Below, in pieces: positions 1 through 63,712 of a stretch of DNA of 64,000 bases. The translations under genes and the position numbers were made by a program. Source of the DNA: Macrostomum lignano. Its lineage: Eukaryota. Where the stretch lies: NCBI GenBank assembly GCA_002269645.1, contig NIVC01001119.1, forward strand, positions 248,001 through 312,000, read 5' to 3'. The notes beneath the pieces are model-generated. The model made no database searches. It was given only the letters and a program-made list of their open reading frames with translations, and was not told the origin of the DNA. Every line of letters starts with the position of its first letter. Position 1 is the first letter of the stretch.

Positions 1-448
1 TTGGAAATCTGCTGCGATCGGAGAGCGCTGGCGAACTGCTGCCGTAGGACAGCACAACCAAATTCCACATGTGAGCAGCCTGGGCTACGTAGGTAGACAC
101 AGTTGAGCAGCCGGTGAGCAGGGTTACTACTCGGCTATTGTTGCTAGGGTGGTACAGCAGTTCGTACATCTTTCTGGCACCCAAGCCCGGATCGCATTGG
201 CTGTCCTGGGGGTGCAGGACCAGGCGATAGTCTGGCAGGATGTCCGGGTGATCATTCACACTCTGCAGGGCCATCTCCACAGCTGGCCAGCAGGCGATAC
301 CGCCAGCCCAGTCGCCAGACATTGGGAACAGGGCACCGATATGTAGAAGGTCCAACGGTTTTTCTCTCTGATTAGATGCCAGACAAAGACTAGCAGTGGA
401 CAAGATCAGCGACCAGGTAAGACTCACAATACAACTGGATTGCCGCAT
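1..448 (-). CDS. GABBR1: GABA-B receptor subunit 1 (class C GPCR), N-terminal coding exon, runs off the window start
   Basis: Manual translation from ATG 448: [24 protein letters not shown] (signal-peptide-like) then [40 protein letters not shown]...DSQCDPG...[37 protein letters not shown]. This closely matches the GABA-B1 Venus-flytrap N-terminus (recalled as [25 protein letters not shown]...GCSSVS...[16 protein letters not shown]). No sushi domains. Missing from the ORF track, presumably because the frame has no stop inside the window. Confidence 0.93.
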
Positions 449-3670: not shown

Positions 3671-6649
<2,979 letters not shown>

Positions 6650-7445
6650 GCCGGTGACGATGCCCGCGTATTGAGACTGAAAAAAATGAATTTTTCTCTT
6701 AGTAAATAATACTGTTAAAAATCCTATTAACTCTACTAGTAGTAGGCTAATTTAGACATTTGTCTAAATTTTAATTTCTAAAATCGAAAAAAAAATGACA
6801 ATACAATGAAGTCTTCTTCGAAACGATAAAAAATGTTATCAGATTTAAACAGATTCTTTCGCTTTCATTTTTCTCGTTATCGAATATTTTTCCACTACGG
6901 CGATAGGGGAGTTGCGTAGATCTGCTGTAGCAAGCAAAACAATGAGAAATCACATTCAAACAGGCCAAACAAATGACACAATGTACTATTTCGCTAAAAG
7001 ACACGAAAAGCAACTAAACTCTATGAACTATTTTGTGAAACGATTGGTGTACTAAATTTAGGCATCTTGAGCAGTTACAGCTAAGAAAAAAGATCTCCAA
7101 GTTTTGTTGCAAAAAATGGGCAGAATATCTCAGTTGAACTTCTATTAGACTAAAGAGTTTATCACACATTTTTATAAGGTCTGTTAACCTGCCTGTCTGT
7201 CTCAGTGTCTAGAGTATTGTATGGACATATATGAGAAGTACAAAGAGAAATCGCTAAGCAGATATTATATAGCTCTCTAAAGTAGATTTGTGAACAATGC
7301 AAACTGAATCACGCATGTACAATTGAATAAAGGATAGTCGCAGTAGACAACAATAGTGTGATAACATTTTTCAAGGCATTCTAAAACCTGTCTATTTAAG
7401 ACAAATTCTTAGTCTATTTTCACTCTGAGTTTCAAGTCACACTTT

Positions 7446-9002: not shown

Positions 9003-10584
9003 TCAGTCGGTCTGCCACTGCTTAAAGAAATCGTTGCCTTTATTGTCAACCACGATAAAAGCTGGGAAATTCTCCACCTCAACGCGCCACACGGCCTCCA
9101 TGCCGAGTTCCTGATATTCCAGCACTTCAACTTTTTTAATGCTGTTCTGCGCCAGGATGGCGGCTGGACCGCCGATGCTGCCCAGGTAGAAGCCGCCGTG
9201 TTTTTTGCAGGCCTCCGTGACAGCTCGGGACCGGTTGCCTTTGGCCAACATCACCATGCTGCCGCCGGCCGCCTGCGGTGCGTAGGGAGGGGACTGTGGT
9301 TCACAATGCTGAGCCTCATTCACTCTATCTTTCACTCACAACAATTATTGACTTACAACAATCATTCACTCACAATAATCATTCACTCACAATAATCATT
9401 CACTCACAACAATCATTGACTCACAACAATCATTCACTCACAATAATAGTTCACTCACAACAATAGTTCACTCACAACAATAGTTCACTCACAACAATCA
9501 TTCACTCACAACAATCATTCACTCACAACAATCATTCACTCACAACAATCATTCACTCACAACAATCATTGACTCACAACAATCACTCACTCACAACAAT
9601 CATTCACTCACAATAGTCATTCACTCAAACGTCAATCCATTCACTCACACATCAATCATTCACTCACACATGAAATATTCACTCACATGCCAAAATCAAT
9701 TCACACTCTCAGAACCAGAACATTCACATTTAAACAACCTGAAGATTAAAGCTCACATTAGAAACACAATTATGAATCAATCACTCATTCAATAGCTATT
9801 AGCAGTAAACCCTAAAAGCAGTGGGAAAACTATCCAACGCACCTGGAACTGGTCCACATAGGAGTCCATCCTTCCAGCCGTAGTAGGGCCAAACGAGCCG
9901 CTAGCATAGCCCTCCGGAGTTTTAGCCGGGCCAGCGTAATAAACCGGATGATCTTTAATGTACTGCGGCAGGCCCTGGCCAGAGTCTAAACGCTGCTTCA
10001 GCTTGGCATGCGCAATGTCCCTAGCAACCACTAGGGTGCCGCTTAGCGACAGTCTAGTCCGAACTGGGTACTTGGACAGCAGCGACAGCACCTTATCCAT
10101 TGGCTGGTTGAGATCTACTTTAACAACTTCATCGCCAAGATCCGAGTCGCGTATTTCTGGCAAATATTTGCTCGGGTCGGTTTCCAATTGTTCCAGGTAG
10201 ACTCCGGTCTCGTCTATTTTGCCCAGCGCCTGCCGATCAGCTGAACAGGACACGCCGATGCCTGCGATGGGGCAACAGTTTGATGGGGCACGTCTAGTCA
10301 CAGTGTCTCTTTAATATAGTTGAACTAAAACTACTGGTAATACTGTCTTTATATGTCTGCTCATGCTACATGTAATTGCTGGTGATTAACCTATCACAGC
10401 TGTCCGTAGGTCTGTCTGTCCGTATATAAACAGGTCTGTCTGTCTTTTGGTTCTTCATCTACCCATCTTAGTCTGTCAGGTGGTTTGGTGTCTGTATTGG
10501 TCTGTCTGTCTGTCTGTCTTAGCTTCTGTCTGTCTGTCTGTCTGTCTTAGCTTCTGTCTGTCTGTCTGTCTGTCTGTCTTAGCT

Positions 10585-10655
<71 letters not shown>

Positions 10656-10860
10656 TAGCTTCTGTCTGTCTGTCTGTCTATCTGTCTTAGCTTCTGTCTG
10701 TCTGTCTGTCTGTCTTAGCTTCTGTCCGTCTGTCTGTCTGTCTGTCTTAGCTTCTGTCTGTCTGTCTGTCTGTCTTAGCTTCTGTCTGTCTGTCTGTCTG
10801 TCTTAGCTTCTGTCTGTCTGTCTGTCTTAGCTTCTGTCTGTCTGTCTGTCTGTCTTAGCT

Positions 10861-10915
<55 letters not shown>

Positions 10916-11052
10916 TAGCTTCTGTCTGTCTGTCTGTCTTAGCTTCTGTCTGTCTGTCTGTCTTAGCTTCTGTCTGTCTGTCTGTCTATCTGTCTTAGCT
11001 TCTGTCTGTCTATCTGTCTTAGCTTCTGTCTGTCTGTCTGTCTGTCTTAGCT

Positions 11053-11083
<31 letters not shown>

Positions 11084-11308
11084 TAGCTTCTGTCTGTCTG
11101 TCTGTCTGTCTTAGCTTCTGTCTGTCTGTCTGTCTGTCTGTCTTAGCTTCTGTCTGTCTGTCTGTCTGTCTGTCTTAGCTTCTGTCCGTCTGTCTGTCTG
11201 TCTGTCTTAGCTTCTGTCTGTCTGTCTGTCTGTCTGTCTTAGCTTCTGTCCGTCTGTCTGTCCGTCTGTCTGTCTTAGCTTCTGTCTGTCTGTCTGTCTG
11301 TCTTAACT

Positions 11309-11391
<83 letters not shown>

Positions 11392-11464
11392 TAGCTTCTG
11401 TCTGTCTGTCTTAGCTTCTGTCTTAGCTTCTGTCTGTCCGTCTGTCTGTCTGTCTGTCTTAGCT

Positions 11465-11495
<31 letters not shown>

Positions 11496-14003
11496 TAGCT
11501 TCTGTCCGTCTGTCTGTCTTAGCTTCTGTCCGTCTGTCTGTCTTAGCTTCTGTCTGTCTGTCTTAGCTTCTGTCCGTCTGTCTGTCTGTCTGTCTTAGCT
11601 TCTGTCTGTCTGTCTGTCTGTCTGTCTTAGCTTCTGTCCGTCTGTCTGTCTTAGCTTCTGTCTGTCTGTCTGTCTTAGCTTCTGTCTGTCTGTCTGTCTG
11701 CCAGCCCAGCGGTCCCCCAGCTAACCAATGGGGCAGGAGGCGCCGTGCCGGGGCAGGCGCACCACCCGCACATCGTGGCAGAAGTATTTGCCGCCGAACT
11801 GAGCTCCGATGCCGCACTGTCTGGTGAGAGCCAGCACCTGCTCCTCGAACTGATGATCGCGGAACGCTCGACCATGCTCGTTGCCGGAGTCGTGCAGATT
11901 GTCAAGGTAGCGAGCGGAGGCGAGTTTCACAGTCTTCAGACAGGCCTCAGCTGAGGTGCCGCCAATCACAATGGCCAGATGATAGGGCGGGCAGGCCGCT
12001 GTGCCTAAAGTCTTGATTTTCTCATCAACAAATTTGAGCAGCTTCTCAGGATTGAGCACAGATTTAGTCTGCTGATAGAGAAAGGTCTTGTTAGCCGAGC
12101 CGCCGCCTTTGGCCATGAACAAAAATTTGTACTCGCGACCGGGGGTTGAGTACAGCTCAATTTGTGCTGGCAGATTAGTGCCAGTGTTCTTCTCCTCGTA
12201 CATGTCCAAGGGCGACACCTGGATGGTAGGTGGACAGTTGTACTTCGAGGATCTATTAGTAAAGAAGCTGTACTTCGAGGATCTATTAGTACAGAAGCTG
12301 TACTTCGAGGATCTATTAGTACAGAAGCTGTACTTCGAGGATCTATTAGTACAGAAGCTGTACTCCGAGGATCTATTAGTACAGAAGCTGTAATTCGAGG
12401 ATCTATTAGAACAGAAGCTGTACTTTGAGGATCTATTAGAACAGAAGCTGTACTTTGAGGATCTATTAGTACAGAAGCTGTACTTTGAGGATCTATTTTA
12501 GTACAGAAGCTGTACTCCGAGGATCTATTAGTACAGAAGCTGTAATTCGAGGATCTATTAGAACAGAAGCTGTACTTTGAGGATCTATTAGAACAGAAGC
12601 TGTACTTTGAGGATCTATTAGTACAGAAGCTGTACTTTGAGGATCTATTAGTACAGAAGCTGTACTTTGAGGATCTATTAGTACAGAAGCTTTAATTCGA
12701 GGATCTATTAGAACAGAAGCTGTACTTTGAGGATCTATTAGAACAGAAGCTGTACTTTGAGGATCTATTAGTACAGAAGCTGTACTTTGAGGATCTATTA
12801 GTACAGAAGCTGTACTTTGAGGATCTATTAGAACAGAAGCTGTACTTTGAGGATCTATTAGAACAGAAGCTGTACTTTGAGGATCTATTAGAACAGAAGC
12901 TGTACTTTGAGGATCTATTAGTACAGAAGCTGTACTTTGAGGATCTATTAGTACAGAAGCTGTACTTTGAGGATCTATTAGTACAGAAGCTTTAATTCGA
13001 GGATCTATTAGAACAGAAGCTGTACTTTGAGGATCTATTAGAACAGAAGCTGTACTTTGAGGATCTATTAGTACAGAAGCTGTACTTTGAGGATCTATTA
13101 GAACAGAAGCTGTACTTTGAGGATCTATTAGTACAGAAGCTGTACTTTGAGGATCTATTTTAGTACAGAAGCTGTACTTTGAGGATCTATTAGTACAGAA
13201 GCTGTACTTTGAGGATCTATTTTAGTACAGAAGCTGTACTTTGAGGATCTATTAGTACAGAAGCTGTACTTTGAGGATCTATTAGTACAGAAGCTGTACT
13301 TTGAGGATCTATTAATTACAGAAACTGTACTTTGAGGATCTATTAGTTGGTACAGAAGCTGTACTTTGAGGATCTATTAATACAGAAGTAGCTGTATTGA
13401 AGAGAGTTATAAATCCATATCGCGGCTGCACCCTGCCAAATGAATATAATTATAATAAAATCTGTTTCGCACCTGAGAGTAGCGCAGATTAGTGCCCGTA
13501 TAGGTATTATAGACGCCATGACTCAAAGCGCTAGCATCATCAGCGCAATGCGTCATAACGTATTGACCCTTCTTGCCAATGACAATAGCGGTGCCGGTGT
13601 CCTGACAGCCAGGCAGCACCATATTAGCGGCAATGTTGGCATTCTTTAACAGTTCTAAAGCCACAAATTTGTCATTCTTAGACGCTTCGGAATCTTTCAG
13701 AATGTTAGCCAGAGACTGAAGATGGCCCGGCCGCAACAGGTGAGCAATGTCAACCATGGCAGTTTGAGCAAGCATGGTCAGCGCTTTGCCATCAACGTGC
13801 AGAATTTTCTTGCCCAAATGCTCGCTGGTGCACACATAGTCGGTGGTTAGCTTTTTGTAAGGCGTATCACTGTCTGCCGGTCGGGTCATCTCCATCACGT
13901 CCTGATAGTGAAACGGTCGTGGCGCCGTTGCTAAGCAACGGGATGAAAGGCGTGAGAGACGCCAGCTGGAGTCTAGCAGTCTTGGCAATGATTGCATTGT
14001 CAT
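9003..14003 (-). CDS. fumA: Class I (4Fe-4S) fumarate hydratase, FumA/FumB family, 4 exons, about 570 aa, with probable mitochondrial presequence
   Basis: Exons 14003-13473, 12218-11726, 10261-9843, 9272-9003, GT-AG, phases 0/1/0, total 1713 nt, open to TGA. Class I motifs [109 protein letters not shown]. The N-terminus [25 protein letters not shown] is Arg/Ser/Leu-rich with one acidic residue. Confidence 0.97.
9330..9700. repeat. 17-bp minisatellite in fumarase intron 3
   Basis: Unit CATTCACTCACAACAAT, about 20 copies, degrading distally. Confidence 0.92.
10400..11700. repeat. (TCTG)n microsatellite punctuated by TCTTAGCT in fumarase intron 2
   Basis: About 1.3 kb of TCTG runs of variable length separated by a constant TTAGCT interruption. 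Confidence 0.96.
12236..13390. repeat. 30-bp minisatellite filling fumarase intron 1
   Basis: Unit TGTACTTTGAGGATCTATTAGTACAGAAGC, about 38 copies. Confidence 0.97.
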
Positions 14004-23938: not shown

Positions 23939-24451
23939 TTAAAGGTGCACACTCACGTTTCCATGAAAGTTGAGTGTCAAGGCCGCACAAATGCAGATTA
24001 GCGACGCTGGTGAATGAAATCCGCCGTCAGGCTTACAAGCCGTGCCGTAGAACACTCGCAGCACACGGTTGACATCCTCCGGCTCAGCCGTCAGCAGGTC
24101 AATTTTTAATGACGGATTCGATTGCATGAAGGCCAACAGCCTTTTGACGTACTGATCCGTCTGTCGTCTGGTATTGTTAATCGCGACACTGTCTTCTAGG
24201 TCGTTGATAGCTTTTTCGAGGTCTTTAACGCTAGGCACGCAGTTGAACATGCCATCCAGGTCAATATCCTCGGGCAGCTCAAACTCGCCATCTCCATTTG
24301 ACGTTTGCTCGACCAGACGCTCGTCCATTTGCTTTTCCAAAAACCGCTCCTCGGTTTGCTGTTGAAGGAGAATATCAATCTTTGATGATGACATTCCGAA
24401 ATGGCTTCTCCATGGCAGTTTCTTGTAGTCTAGCTCGTACATAGTAGACAC
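23939..24451 (-). pseudogene. Crypton-like (tyrosine recombinase / DUF3504-associated) N-terminal fragment
   Basis: NTRRQTDQYVKRLLAFMQ...LLTAEPEDVNRVLRVFYGTACKPDGGFHSPASLICICAAL (about 24175-23978) matches the recalled pattern NT...T...V..F..W......EL...L..FY...RK.DG..Y...SL..IRAA of Crypton/ZMYM/KCTD1/QRICH1 proteins. The catalytic R-H-R-Y region was not seen. Confidence 0.6.
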
Positions 24452-24634
24452 GCTTAGCCGGTGGCTCCATGGTCAAGTTGTAGATCGCGTGATTTCTGTG
24501 CACTTCTTAAACTTCAAACGCTCTTAAAGTTATATAGATATAACGTTATGTCTATCGCTGATACCCGAAAAGCGTGCAGATATCGGATGTCTATGGCCAC
24601 CAGAGAGAATAATTTCGCGTTCGTACAATGCGTC

Positions 24635-47879: not shown

Positions 47880-48210
47880 ACTTGCAGACCTAACTTAACC
47901 AAAACCCTAACCTAAATCCACTTCTAACCTAAATCTTAATCCCAACCTAAATACTAACCCCAACCTAAATACTAACCCTAACCTAAATCCTAACACTAAC
48001 CTAAATCATAACCCTAACCTAAATCCTAACCCATAACCTAAATCCTAACGCTAACCTAAATACTAACCCTAACCTAAATCCTAACACTAACCTAAATCCT
48101 AACCCTAACCTAAATCCTAACACCAACCTAAGTCCTAACCCTAACCTGAACACTAACACCAATCTAAACACTAACACCAACCTAAATCATAACCCTAAGC
48201 TAAATCCTAA
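47880..48210. repeat. 18-bp telomere-like (CCTAAC/AACCCT) minisatellite
   Basis: Unit AACCCTAACCTAAATCCT with variants. Confidence 0.88.

Positions 48211-52284: not shown

Positions 52285-63712
<11,428 letters not shown>

What the first reader, a model, noticed from the sequence alone, without database searches (positions are those of the whole stretch)
9003..14003. Intron-containing, mitochondrion-targeted class I (Fe-S) fumarate hydratase in an animal genome
Seen: a complete 570-aa FumA/FumB-type ORF over four GT-AG exons. It has the three Cys-bearing motifs (CQDTG, ACPPYH, GASCP) and a presequence-like N-terminus, and its neighbours are metazoan genes. Established: vertebrates, insects and yeast use the unrelated iron-free class II enzyme. 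Class I is oxygen-sensitive and typical of bacteria, trypanosomatids and apicomplexans, and has been reported in some flatworms such as schistosomes. Inference: retained ancestral or anciently transferred enzyme that may serve anaerobic malate dismutation/fumarate respiration with rhodoquinone. It is the most unusual gene in the window, though not unprecedented.
Basis: partly seen in the sequence, partly recalled or inferred. Interest (0 to 1): 0.72.

Follow-up and report, generated by a model that had tools for sequence, protein, structure and literature searches.

The report
Flatworm mitochondrial iron-sulfur fumarase gene
This is a real, intact, four-exon gene for an iron-sulfur (class I) fumarase in the free-living flatworm Macrostomum lignano, but the same gene is already annotated there, occurs in many invertebrate phyla and is covered in the literature, so it is ordinary.

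Summary
On the minus strand, four exons (14003-13473, 12218-11726, 10261-9843, 9272-9003) joined by three GT..AG introns encode a 570-aa protein. It has Pfam Fumerase plus Fumerase_C domains and matches Leishmania major class I fumarate hydratase structures at about 750 bits. All 17 cluster-binding, catalytic, substrate-binding and other conserved residues listed for LmFH-2 are conserved.

Window 1-23979 is 100% identical to Macrostomum lignano contig NIVC01001119.1. The gene is GenBank PAA72040.1 and UniProt A0A1I8I2I2. Two further near-identical copies exist in the same assembly.

Orthologs at 70-80% identity occur in nemerteans, molluscs, annelids, echinoderms, hemichordates, amphioxus, placozoans, a priapulid, a rotifer and parasitic flatworms. 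Animal sequences form one clade (100/100 NJ bootstraps). Intron 1 sits at the same position and phase in five of seven other animals tested. So this is an old animal gene, not contamination or recent transfer.

A 29-residue basic, acid-poor, amphipathic N-terminal extension fits mitochondrial import.

One correction: the third cluster cysteine is Cys347 in GVSCSADR, not the Cys of GASCP.

The malate-dismutation idea is already published for flukes and remains untested here. Novelty: already known. Interest is low.

The parts
13473..14003 (-). Exon 1 (codons 1-177). Start ATG is at 14003-14001, with a second in-frame ATG at 13997-13995. Includes the Cys133 codon at 13607-13605 in the CQDTG motif.
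   Evidence: In-frame stop upstream at 14015-14013. Cys133 aligns to LmFH-2 Cys133.
13917..14003 (-). Codons 1-29: N-terminal extension absent from E. coli FumA and a likely mitochondrial presequence ([29 protein letters not shown]).
   Evidence: Composition is 5 Arg, 0 Lys, 1 Asp, 0 Glu, net charge +4. The 18-mer helical hydrophobic moment is 0.63, reached by 2% of shuffles. Most animal orthologs with a complete N-terminus carry a similar basic, acid-poor extension of about 19-43 aa.
12219..13472 (-). Intron 1 (1254 nt, GT..AG, phase 0, between Gln177 and Val178). It is almost filled by a 30-nt minisatellite of 38 copies at 12239-13388.
   Evidence: The position and phase are shared with Branchiostoma, Trichoplax, Tubulanus, Echinococcus and Calicophoron.
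11726..12218 (-). Exon 2 (codons 178-341 plus the first base of codon 342). Contains the KGGGS motif, Cys253 (codon 11993-11991, ACPPYH), His335 and the GASCP motif.
10262..11725 (-). Intron 2 (1464 nt, GT..AG, phase 1, inside Gly342). It is mostly a GTCT-rich array of 24-32-nt units at 10500-11700.
   Evidence: This position was not found in any of the seven other animals mapped.
9843..10261 (-). Exon 3 (rest of codon 342 to codon 481). Contains Cys347 (codon 10247-10245, GVSCSADR; third cluster ligand by homology), Arg422, Thr468, Thr469 and Arg472.
9273..9842 (-). Intron 3 (570 nt, GT..AG, phase 0, between Gln481 and Ala482). Contains a 17-nt minisatellite of about 20 copies at 9327-9668.
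   Evidence: This position was not found in any of the seven other animals mapped.
9003..9272 (-). Exon 4 (codons 482-570 plus stop TGA at 9005-9003). Contains Lys492.

Best explanation
The locus is a nuclear gene of the free-living flatworm Macrostomum lignano. It encodes a single-chain class I (FumA/FumB-type) fumarate hydratase.

Inferred from homology: the protein binds a [4Fe-4S] cluster through Cys133, Cys253 and Cys347. It catalyses the reversible hydration of fumarate to L-malate, using the Asp135/His335 acid pair and the Thr468/Arg422/Arg472 base system described for Leishmania LmFH-2.

Inferred from composition only: a 29-residue basic amphipathic N-terminal extension most likely sends it to the mitochondrial matrix. 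There it would work in the TCA cycle, or in reverse (malate to fumarate) when fumarate is the electron sink.

Shown here: it is one member of an orthologous group inherited vertically within animals since before the placozoan-bilaterian split. Vertebrates and arthropods, which use only class II, would then have lost it (inference).
For: Domains and structural relatives:
- Pfam Fumerase (residues 79-353, E 4e-81) plus Fumerase_C (361-567, E 7e-87).
- NCBIfam class I fumarate hydratase models score 755-863 bits.
- PDB Leishmania major FH entries 6mso and 5l2r score 750 and 745 bits over nearly the full length.
- All 17 LmFH-2 residues taken from bioRxiv 10.1101/2022.09.03.506457 are identical in the window protein and in E. 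coli FumA. These are the cluster ligands, catalytic residues, substrate contacts, the KGxGS motif and the tunnel residues.

Source of the DNA:
- Window 1-23979 is 100% identical to M. lignano GCA_002269645.1 contig NIVC01001119.1, which is 355 kb.
- A WD40 gene and a class C GPCR lie next to the gene.

Other copies:
- Three copies in the assembly have the same four-exon structure.
- They differ at 8-9 synonymous but only 1-2 nonsynonymous codons.

Orthologs and ancestry:
- Orthologs at 70-80% identity occur in many animal phyla.
- Metazoa are monophyletic in 100 of 100 NJ bootstraps.
- The intron 1 position and phase are shared with 5 of 7 other animals, including Trichoplax and Branchiostoma.

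Targeting:
- Jayaraman et al. report that where both classes exist, class I is the one predicted to be mitochondrial.
Against: - No activity, cluster or localisation data exist for this protein.
- No dedicated targeting predictor was available. The presequence call rests on composition and hydrophobic moment. The 11-mer moment is reached by 5.8% of shuffles.
- The protein scores below NCBI's curated equivalog cut-off for E. coli FumA (863 vs 1105 bits). It is therefore a family member, not a FumA equivalog.
- In the NJ tree M. lignano does not group with parasitic flatworms (5 of 100 bootstraps). It groups weakly with nemerteans (65 of 100), so resolution within animals is poor.
- Direct transcript reads were not examined.
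Confidence: 0.9

Rival explanations
1. The gene is bacterial contamination, or the contig is a chimera of bacterial and animal DNA.
For: Bacterial homologs reach 66-72% identity, only a few points below the animal orthologs. The CDS has higher GC (54%) than the window average.
Against: - Three spliceosomal GT..AG introns interrupt the frame.
- One intron position is shared with five other animals.
- The gene sits inside a 355-kb contig beside animal genes. At least one of the two other copies shows the same neighbours.
- GC3 of 62% is within the range of neighbouring host exons, 46-67%.
- Animal sequences are monophyletic in 100 of 100 bootstraps.
Confidence: 0.01
2. The gene was acquired recently by horizontal transfer into the Macrostomum or flatworm lineage.
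For: Class I fumarases of eukaryotes are polyphyletic, and multiple bacterium-to-eukaryote transfers have been proposed (PMC13655608). A Fasciola genome paper called the enzyme 'Platyhelminthes-specific' (PMC5257007).
Against: - Orthologs occur from Placozoa to Cephalochordata.
- They form a single animal clade (100 of 100 bootstraps).
- Seven intron positions are shared between at least two phyla.
- Any transfer must therefore predate the placozoan-bilaterian ancestor.
- The bacterial sister group is unresolved. Alphaproteobacteria are recovered as sister in only 10-20 of 100 bootstraps.
Confidence: 0.02
3. The enzyme is specialised for anaerobic malate dismutation. It would run malate to fumarate to feed rhodoquinone-dependent fumarate reductase, rather than serving as a general TCA-cycle fumarase.
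For: - Parasitic flatworms use malate dismutation with fumarase and rhodoquinone (PMC3510090).
- The same role was suggested for the fluke class I enzyme (PMC5257007).
- Cestodes reportedly have only class I (bioRxiv 10.1101/158956).
- M. lignano lives in intertidal sand, where oxygen can be low (own knowledge).
Against: - Orthologs are just as conserved in echinoderms, hemichordates, amphioxus and Trichoplax. These are not known as rhodoquinone users (own knowledge).
- Nematodes, which do use rhodoquinone, do not appear among the 120 best hits. They use a class II enzyme (own knowledge).
- E. coli FumA works under aerobic conditions (own knowledge).
- No paper held in the library links Macrostomum to rhodoquinone.
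- Nothing in the sequence tells the direction of flux.
Confidence: 0.3
4. The gene is a decaying or non-functional copy, one of several produced by genome duplication.
For: Three copies exist. GenBank labels the models 'hypothetical protein, partial'.
Against: - All three copies have intact frames.
- Every functional residue is conserved.
- Differences between copies are 8-9 synonymous versus 1-2 nonsynonymous codons.
- The 'partial' label only reflects a truncated 5' end of the model. The genomic frame has a start codon and an upstream stop.
Confidence: 0.03

Closest known systems
Animal class I fumarate hydratases (RefSeq 'fumarate hydratase class I, aerobic-like'), e.g. Tubulanus polymorphus, Aplysia californica, Branchiostoma floridae, Trichoplax adhaerens, Echinococcus multilocularis, Fasciola hepatica
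   Same: - They share 70-80% identity over the full length and the same two-domain architecture.
- They have the same kind of basic N-terminal extension.
- They fall in one clade with 100 of 100 bootstraps.
- Intron 1 is at the same position and phase in five of the seven species mapped.
   Different: - M. lignano has kept only one of the widely shared introns.
- It has two introns at positions seen in none of the seven others.
- Its introns are packed with minisatellites.
- It is present in three near-identical copies.
Leishmania major fumarate hydratases LmFH-1 (mitochondrial, PDB 6mso) and LmFH-2 (cytosolic, PDB 5l2r)
   Same: The match is full length at 745-750 bits. Identity is 61-62% on the trimmed alignment. 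All cluster ligands and all catalytic and substrate-binding residues are identical.
   Different: These are protist enzymes. They are not sister to the animal clade in the NJ tree (0 of 100 bootstraps). Kinetoplastids have separate mitochondrial and cytosolic genes.
Escherichia coli FumA/FumB (class I, [4Fe-4S])
   Same: Identity is 66% on the trimmed alignment. The domains are the same, and the ligand cysteines correspond to FumA Cys105, Cys224 and Cys318.
   Different: - E. coli FumA has no N-terminal extension and begins four residues before the conserved PFHYQ.
- The window protein scores 863 bits against the FumA equivalog model, whose cut-off is 1105.
- The E. coli gene has no introns.
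Class II fumarate hydratase (human FH, yeast Fum1, E. coli FumC)
   Same: It catalyses the same reaction and is the usual mitochondrial fumarase of animals (own knowledge; PMC13655608 reports it in 93% of animal proteomes).
   Different: The fold is unrelated and it has no iron-sulfur cluster. The window protein gives no Pfam hit other than Fumerase and Fumerase_C.

Membership tests
Class I fumarate hydratase, single-chain FumA/FumB type | N-terminal Fumerase (PF05681) and C-terminal Fumerase_C (PF05683) domains in one polypeptide | tested here: met
   both domains are well above the gathering scores (272.6 and 290.5 bits) and together cover residues 79-567.
Class I fumarate hydratase, single-chain FumA/FumB type | Three cysteines that ligate the [4Fe-4S] cluster (LmFH-2 Cys133, Cys252, Cys346) | tested here: met
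   they align to Cys133, Cys253 and Cys347 of the window protein.
Class I fumarate hydratase, single-chain FumA/FumB type | Catalytic acid/base and substrate-binding residues (Asp135, His334, Thr467, Thr468, Arg471, Gln134, Arg173, Gly216, Arg421, Lys491; KGxGS motif) | tested here: met
   all are identical in the window protein.
Class I fumarate hydratase, single-chain FumA/FumB type | Oxygen-labile [4Fe-4S] cluster and fumarase activity of the protein itself | not testable with these tools
   This needs anaerobic purification, spectroscopy and an enzyme assay.
E. coli FumA equivalog (NCBIfam NF011919) | Whole-protein score at or above the curated cut-off of 1105 bits | tested here: not met
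   the score is 862.9 bits. The protein is a family-level relative, not a FumA equivalog by NCBI's criterion.
Animal (metazoan) class I fumarate hydratase orthologous group | Branches within a single animal clade | tested here: met
   Metazoa are recovered in 100 of 100 NJ bootstraps. The comparison set was 22 of the closest bacterial homologs, E. coli FumA and two Leishmania enzymes.
Animal (metazoan) class I fumarate hydratase orthologous group | Shared spliceosomal intron positions | tested here: met
   intron 1 (phase 0, Gln177|Val178) is shared with Branchiostoma, Trichoplax, Tubulanus, Echinococcus and Calicophoron. Introns 2 and 3 are not shared.
Mitochondrial matrix proteins with a cleavable presequence | N-terminal extension that is basic, lacks acidic residues and can form an amphipathic helix | tested here: inconclusive
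   the extension is 29 aa with net charge +4. The 18-mer hydrophobic moment of 0.63 is reached by 2% of shuffles, and the 11-mer moment by 5.8%. An R-x-L|A motif at residues 22-25 fits an R-3 cleavage site (own knowledge). No trained predictor or localisation data were available.
Class II fumarate hydratase (Lyase_1 superfamily) | Lyase_1 and FumaraseC_C domains | tested here: not met
   no such hit.
L(+)-tartrate dehydratase TtdA/TtdB (related Fe-S hydro-lyase) | Best match to the TtdA/TtdB models | tested here: not met
   the Ttd models score only 58-80 bits, against 755-863 bits for the class I fumarase models.

The most novel reading that the evidence does not exclude
Two things are not excluded.

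1. In this free-living flatworm the class I enzyme may be the main or only mitochondrial fumarase, as reported for cestodes. It could be tied to rhodoquinone-dependent fumarate reduction. That would make M. lignano a tractable, transgenic model for a helminth drug-target pathway.

2. The two M. lignano-only introns, in codon 342 and between codons 481 and 482, may be lineage-specific intron gains in an otherwise very conserved gene. Each is filled with its own minisatellite.
Probability: 0.2. Interest if true: 0.35.

Novelty: already known. Interest (0 to 1): 0.12.

Why it matters
It matters little as a discovery.
- The gene is already in GenBank and UniProt for this species.
- Class I fumarases in animals are catalogued in the literature (bioRxiv 10.1101/158956; PMC13655608).
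- The malate-dismutation idea is published for flukes (PMC5257007).

Modest value remains.
- GenBank still calls the three M. lignano copies 'hypothetical protein, partial', and that annotation could be corrected.
- The enzyme is absent from vertebrate hosts and has been suggested as a worm-specific target. A free-living, transgenic flatworm that carries it could serve as a safe model.
- The single animal clade with shared introns argues for one ancient origin within animals followed by repeated loss. This refines the 'patchy distribution, multiple transfers' picture for this one group.

Tried and rejected
- Exhaustive 50%-identity representative search. The whole FumA-type family collapses into one representative plus fragments, so it gave no usable outgroups for a tree.
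- Look-up of the UniProt 568-aa product. It is not on record.
- Look-up of the spliced 570-aa product.
- PDB searches with the two WD40-gene exon peptides that I recalled as DCAF7-like. There were no hits. The gene is therefore reported only as a WD40 protein, on the basis of the Pfam families.
- The published JBC version of the Plasmodium fumarase paper, for its table of eukaryotes with class I. It is not held, and the table is an image in the preprint.
- Whether M. lignano also has a class II fumarase. No tool here searches a eukaryote genome.
- Bacterial origin of the animal clade. Alphaproteobacteria sit next to animals in the NJ tree, but only in 10-20 of 100 bootstraps. No claim is made.
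- Structure prediction was judged unnecessary, given 61-62% identity to solved structures with all functional residues conserved.
Full report
**What is there**

ORF listing and direct reading of the minus strand between 8900 and 14300 show four coding blocks. I joined them at 14003-13473, 12218-11726, 10261-9843 and 9272-9003.
- Every intron starts with GT and ends with AG.
- The CDS is 1713 nt and gives 570 aa without an internal stop.
- An in-frame TGA lies three codons upstream of the first ATG, so the frame is complete.

**What the protein is**

- Pfam finds Fumerase (residues 79-353) and Fumerase_C (361-567) with E-values of 4e-81 and 7e-87, and nothing else.
- NCBIfam class I fumarate hydratase models score 755-863 bits. 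This is below the 1105-bit equivalog cut-off for E. coli FumA, and far above the tartrate dehydratase models.
- The best solved structures are the two Leishmania major class I enzymes, 6mso and 5l2r, at about 750 bits over almost the whole chain.

I took the list of functional LmFH-2 residues from bioRxiv 10.1101/2022.09.03.506457. It covers:
- cluster ligands Cys133, Cys252 and Cys346;
- catalytic residues Asp135, His334, Thr467, Thr468 and Arg471;
- substrate contacts Gln134, Arg173, Gly216, Arg421 and Lys491;
- Lys213 and Ser217 of the KGxGS motif;
- tunnel residues Gln195 and Glu267.

All 17 are identical in the window protein and in E. coli FumA.

The third ligand aligns to Cys347 in GVSCSADR, on exon 3. 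It does not align to Cys339 in GASCP, on exon 2.

**Where the DNA comes from**

- The best protein hit is 100% identical: UniProt A0A1I8I2I2, 'fumarate hydratase', Macrostomum lignano.
- Its 90% cluster also holds three GenBank proteins from the same species, labelled 'hypothetical protein, partial'.
- Fetching the contig of one of them, PAA72040.1, and aligning it shows that window 1-23979 is 100% identical to contig NIVC01001119.1 (355,200 bp) of assembly GCA_002269645.1.
- The annotated CDS covers window 13979-9003. Its product equals mine from Leu9 onward.
- On that contig the next called genes are a 362-aa WD40 protein (window 3671-6664, minus strand) and an 884-aa ANF_receptor + 7tm_3 receptor (from window 448 downward).
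- My own Pfam scan of window ORFs also finds the ANF_receptor exon, and a multi-exon KH-domain gene on the plus strand at 53.4-61.9 kb.

The neighbours are therefore animal-type genes on one long contig.

**Other copies**

Two more loci in the same assembly (contigs NIVC01001184.1 and NIVC01000206.1) carry the same gene.
- Both have the same four-exon structure.
- At least one has the same WD40 and receptor neighbours.
- The three coding sequences differ at 8-9 synonymous and 1-2 nonsynonymous codons out of 562. This is what purifying selection on duplicated or allelic copies would give.

**Is it a real animal gene or something bacterial?**

The closest bacterial homologs come from Myxococcota, Alphaproteobacteria, Bdellovibrionales and Nocardioides. 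They reach 66-72% identity, only a little below the animal orthologs at 70-80%. Identity alone does not settle the question, but three other lines do.

1. *Phylogeny.* I built a neighbour-joining tree from 34 animal sequences, 22 of the closest bacterial sequences, E. coli FumA (taken from NC_000913) and the two Leishmania enzymes.
   - The animals are recovered as one clade in 100 of 100 bootstraps.
   - Neodermatan flatworms also get 100.
   - M. lignano groups weakly with nemerteans (65) rather than with the parasites (5), so internal resolution is poor.
   - Leishmania never joins the animals (0 of 100).
   - Alphaproteobacteria are the neighbours in the point estimate, but in only 10-20 of 100 replicates. 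The deeper origin is unresolved.
2. *Intron positions.* I mapped exact exon junctions for seven other animals from their genomic loci: Branchiostoma, Trichoplax, Tubulanus, Echinococcus, Calicophoron, Brachionus and Dimorphilus.
   - M. lignano intron 1 (phase 0, between Gln177 and Val178) is at the same position and phase in five of the seven, including the placozoan and the cephalochordate.
   - Several other positions are shared among those species.
3. *Codon composition.* GC3 of the coding sequence (62%) lies within the range of neighbouring host exons, 46-67%.

Contamination, chimerism and recent transfer are therefore excluded. The gene was in the common ancestor of placozoans and bilaterians.

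**Targeting**

Compared with E. coli FumA, which begins four residues before the conserved PFHYQ, the flatworm protein has 29 extra residues: [29 protein letters not shown].
- It has five Arg, no Lys, one Asp and no Glu.
- The helical hydrophobic moment of its best 18-mer (0.63) is reached by 2% of shuffles. That of its best 11-mer is reached by 5.8%.
- Almost every animal ortholog with a complete N-terminus has a comparable extension of about 19-43 residues that is basic and nearly acid-free.
- Jayaraman et al. report that in organisms with both classes, class I is the one predicted to be mitochondrial.

Mitochondrial import is therefore likely. It remains an inference, because no trained predictor or experiment was available.

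**What is already known**

- The Plasmodium fumarase paper catalogues eukaryotes with class I, including multicellular ones. It notes that Hymenolepis and Echinococcus have only class I.
- The Fasciola genome paper reports a class I enzyme in trematodes alongside class II. [quoted passage not shown]
- A 2026 survey of about 21,000 proteomes finds class I in 81 of 1,277 animal proteomes. It finds eukaryotic sequences scattered among bacterial ones.
- One search shows named orthologs in Nemertea, Mollusca, Annelida, Echinodermata, Hemichordata, Cephalochordata, Placozoa, Priapulida, Rotifera and Platyhelminthes.
- No vertebrate, arthropod, nematode or cnidarian is named among the 120 best hits, though only 120 were listed.

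**Function**

The chemistry is secure by homology: reversible interconversion of fumarate and L-malate at a [4Fe-4S] cluster. The physiological direction is not.
- The malate-dismutation reading is plausible for a flatworm.
- It is not specifically supported, because equally conserved orthologs occur in animals not known for rhodoquinone metabolism (own knowledge).
- No paper in the library links Macrostomum with rhodoquinone.
- I rate a dedicated anaerobic role at about 0.3, and a general mitochondrial fumarase role, usable in both directions, as the default.

**Side observations**

- All three introns are nearly filled by unrelated minisatellites: a 30-mer of 38 copies, a GTCT-rich array of 24-32-nt units with about 40 copies, and a 17-mer of about 20 copies.
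- The same repeat families, with different copy numbers, occupy the introns of the other two gene copies.
- The window as a whole carries about forty distinct arrays.
- Introns 2 and 3 lie at positions not used in any of the seven other animals. M. lignano lacks seven positions that others share.

**Verdict**

- The third cluster cysteine was misassigned.
- Rarity was overstated.
- The physiological role is untested.

The finding is already known, and I score its interest as low.

Noticed in passing
window 12239-13388, 10500-11700, 9327-9668 (introns 1-3 of the fumarase gene): Each intron is almost entirely a different minisatellite: a 30-nt unit of 38 copies, a GTCT-rich array of 24-32-nt units with about 40 copies, and a 17-nt unit of about 20 copies. 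The other two gene copies in the assembly (L090, L091) carry the same repeat families with different array lengths. Intron lengths range over 733-1279, 958-1464 and 570-976 nt.
   Followed up: partly
window 11725/10262 (codon 342, phase 1) and 9842/9273 (between codons 481 and 482, phase 0): Introns 2 and 3 are at positions not used in Branchiostoma, Trichoplax, Tubulanus, Echinococcus, Calicophoron, Brachionus or Dimorphilus. M. lignano also lacks seven positions that those species share. This suggests heavy intron loss plus two possible lineage-specific gains.
   Followed up: partly
whole window: About forty distinct high-scoring tandem-repeat arrays, with units of 2-209 nt and mostly unrelated to each other, are spread over the 64 kb. 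Some lie inside introns of the neighbouring genes, for example ACAG-type repeats at 5054-5623 within the WD40 gene.
   Followed up: no
window 47903-48210: An 18-nt repeat, AACCCTAACCTAAATCCT, of 17 copies looks like a degenerate interstitial telomere-type (CCCTAA-like) array.
   Followed up: no
window 3671-6664 (-) and 1-448 (-): Downstream neighbours on the same strand are a 362-aa WD40 protein and the 5' part of an 884-aa class C GPCR (ANF_receptor + 7tm_3; GABA-B-like from memory). From memory the WD40 exon peptides resemble DCAF7/WDR68, but the PDB searches found nothing. The same gene order is seen at a second M. lignano locus, L091.
   Followed up: partly
window about 53430-61918 (+): A multi-exon gene encodes several KH_1 domains separated by long repeat-filled introns. 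From memory it is poly(rC)-binding-protein-like. Exon pieces lie at 53430-53738, 55819-56100, 56743-57267 and 61346-61918.
   Followed up: no
window 23942-24472 (-): A 177-aa open frame has a weak, sub-threshold match to the QRICH1 domain (20.1 bits against a cut-off of 30.8). No gene is called there in the GenBank annotation.
   Followed up: no
window 13979-14003 (-): The GenBank model PAA72040.1 starts at Leu9 and is flagged partial and 'hypothetical protein'. The genomic frame has two in-frame ATGs (14003, 13997) preceded by a stop. The record is therefore under-annotated rather than truly incomplete. A second UniProt entry (A0A1I8JF77) reads LQTMQSL at this point, which suggests that Met3 is the start shared with that entry.
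   Followed up: partly
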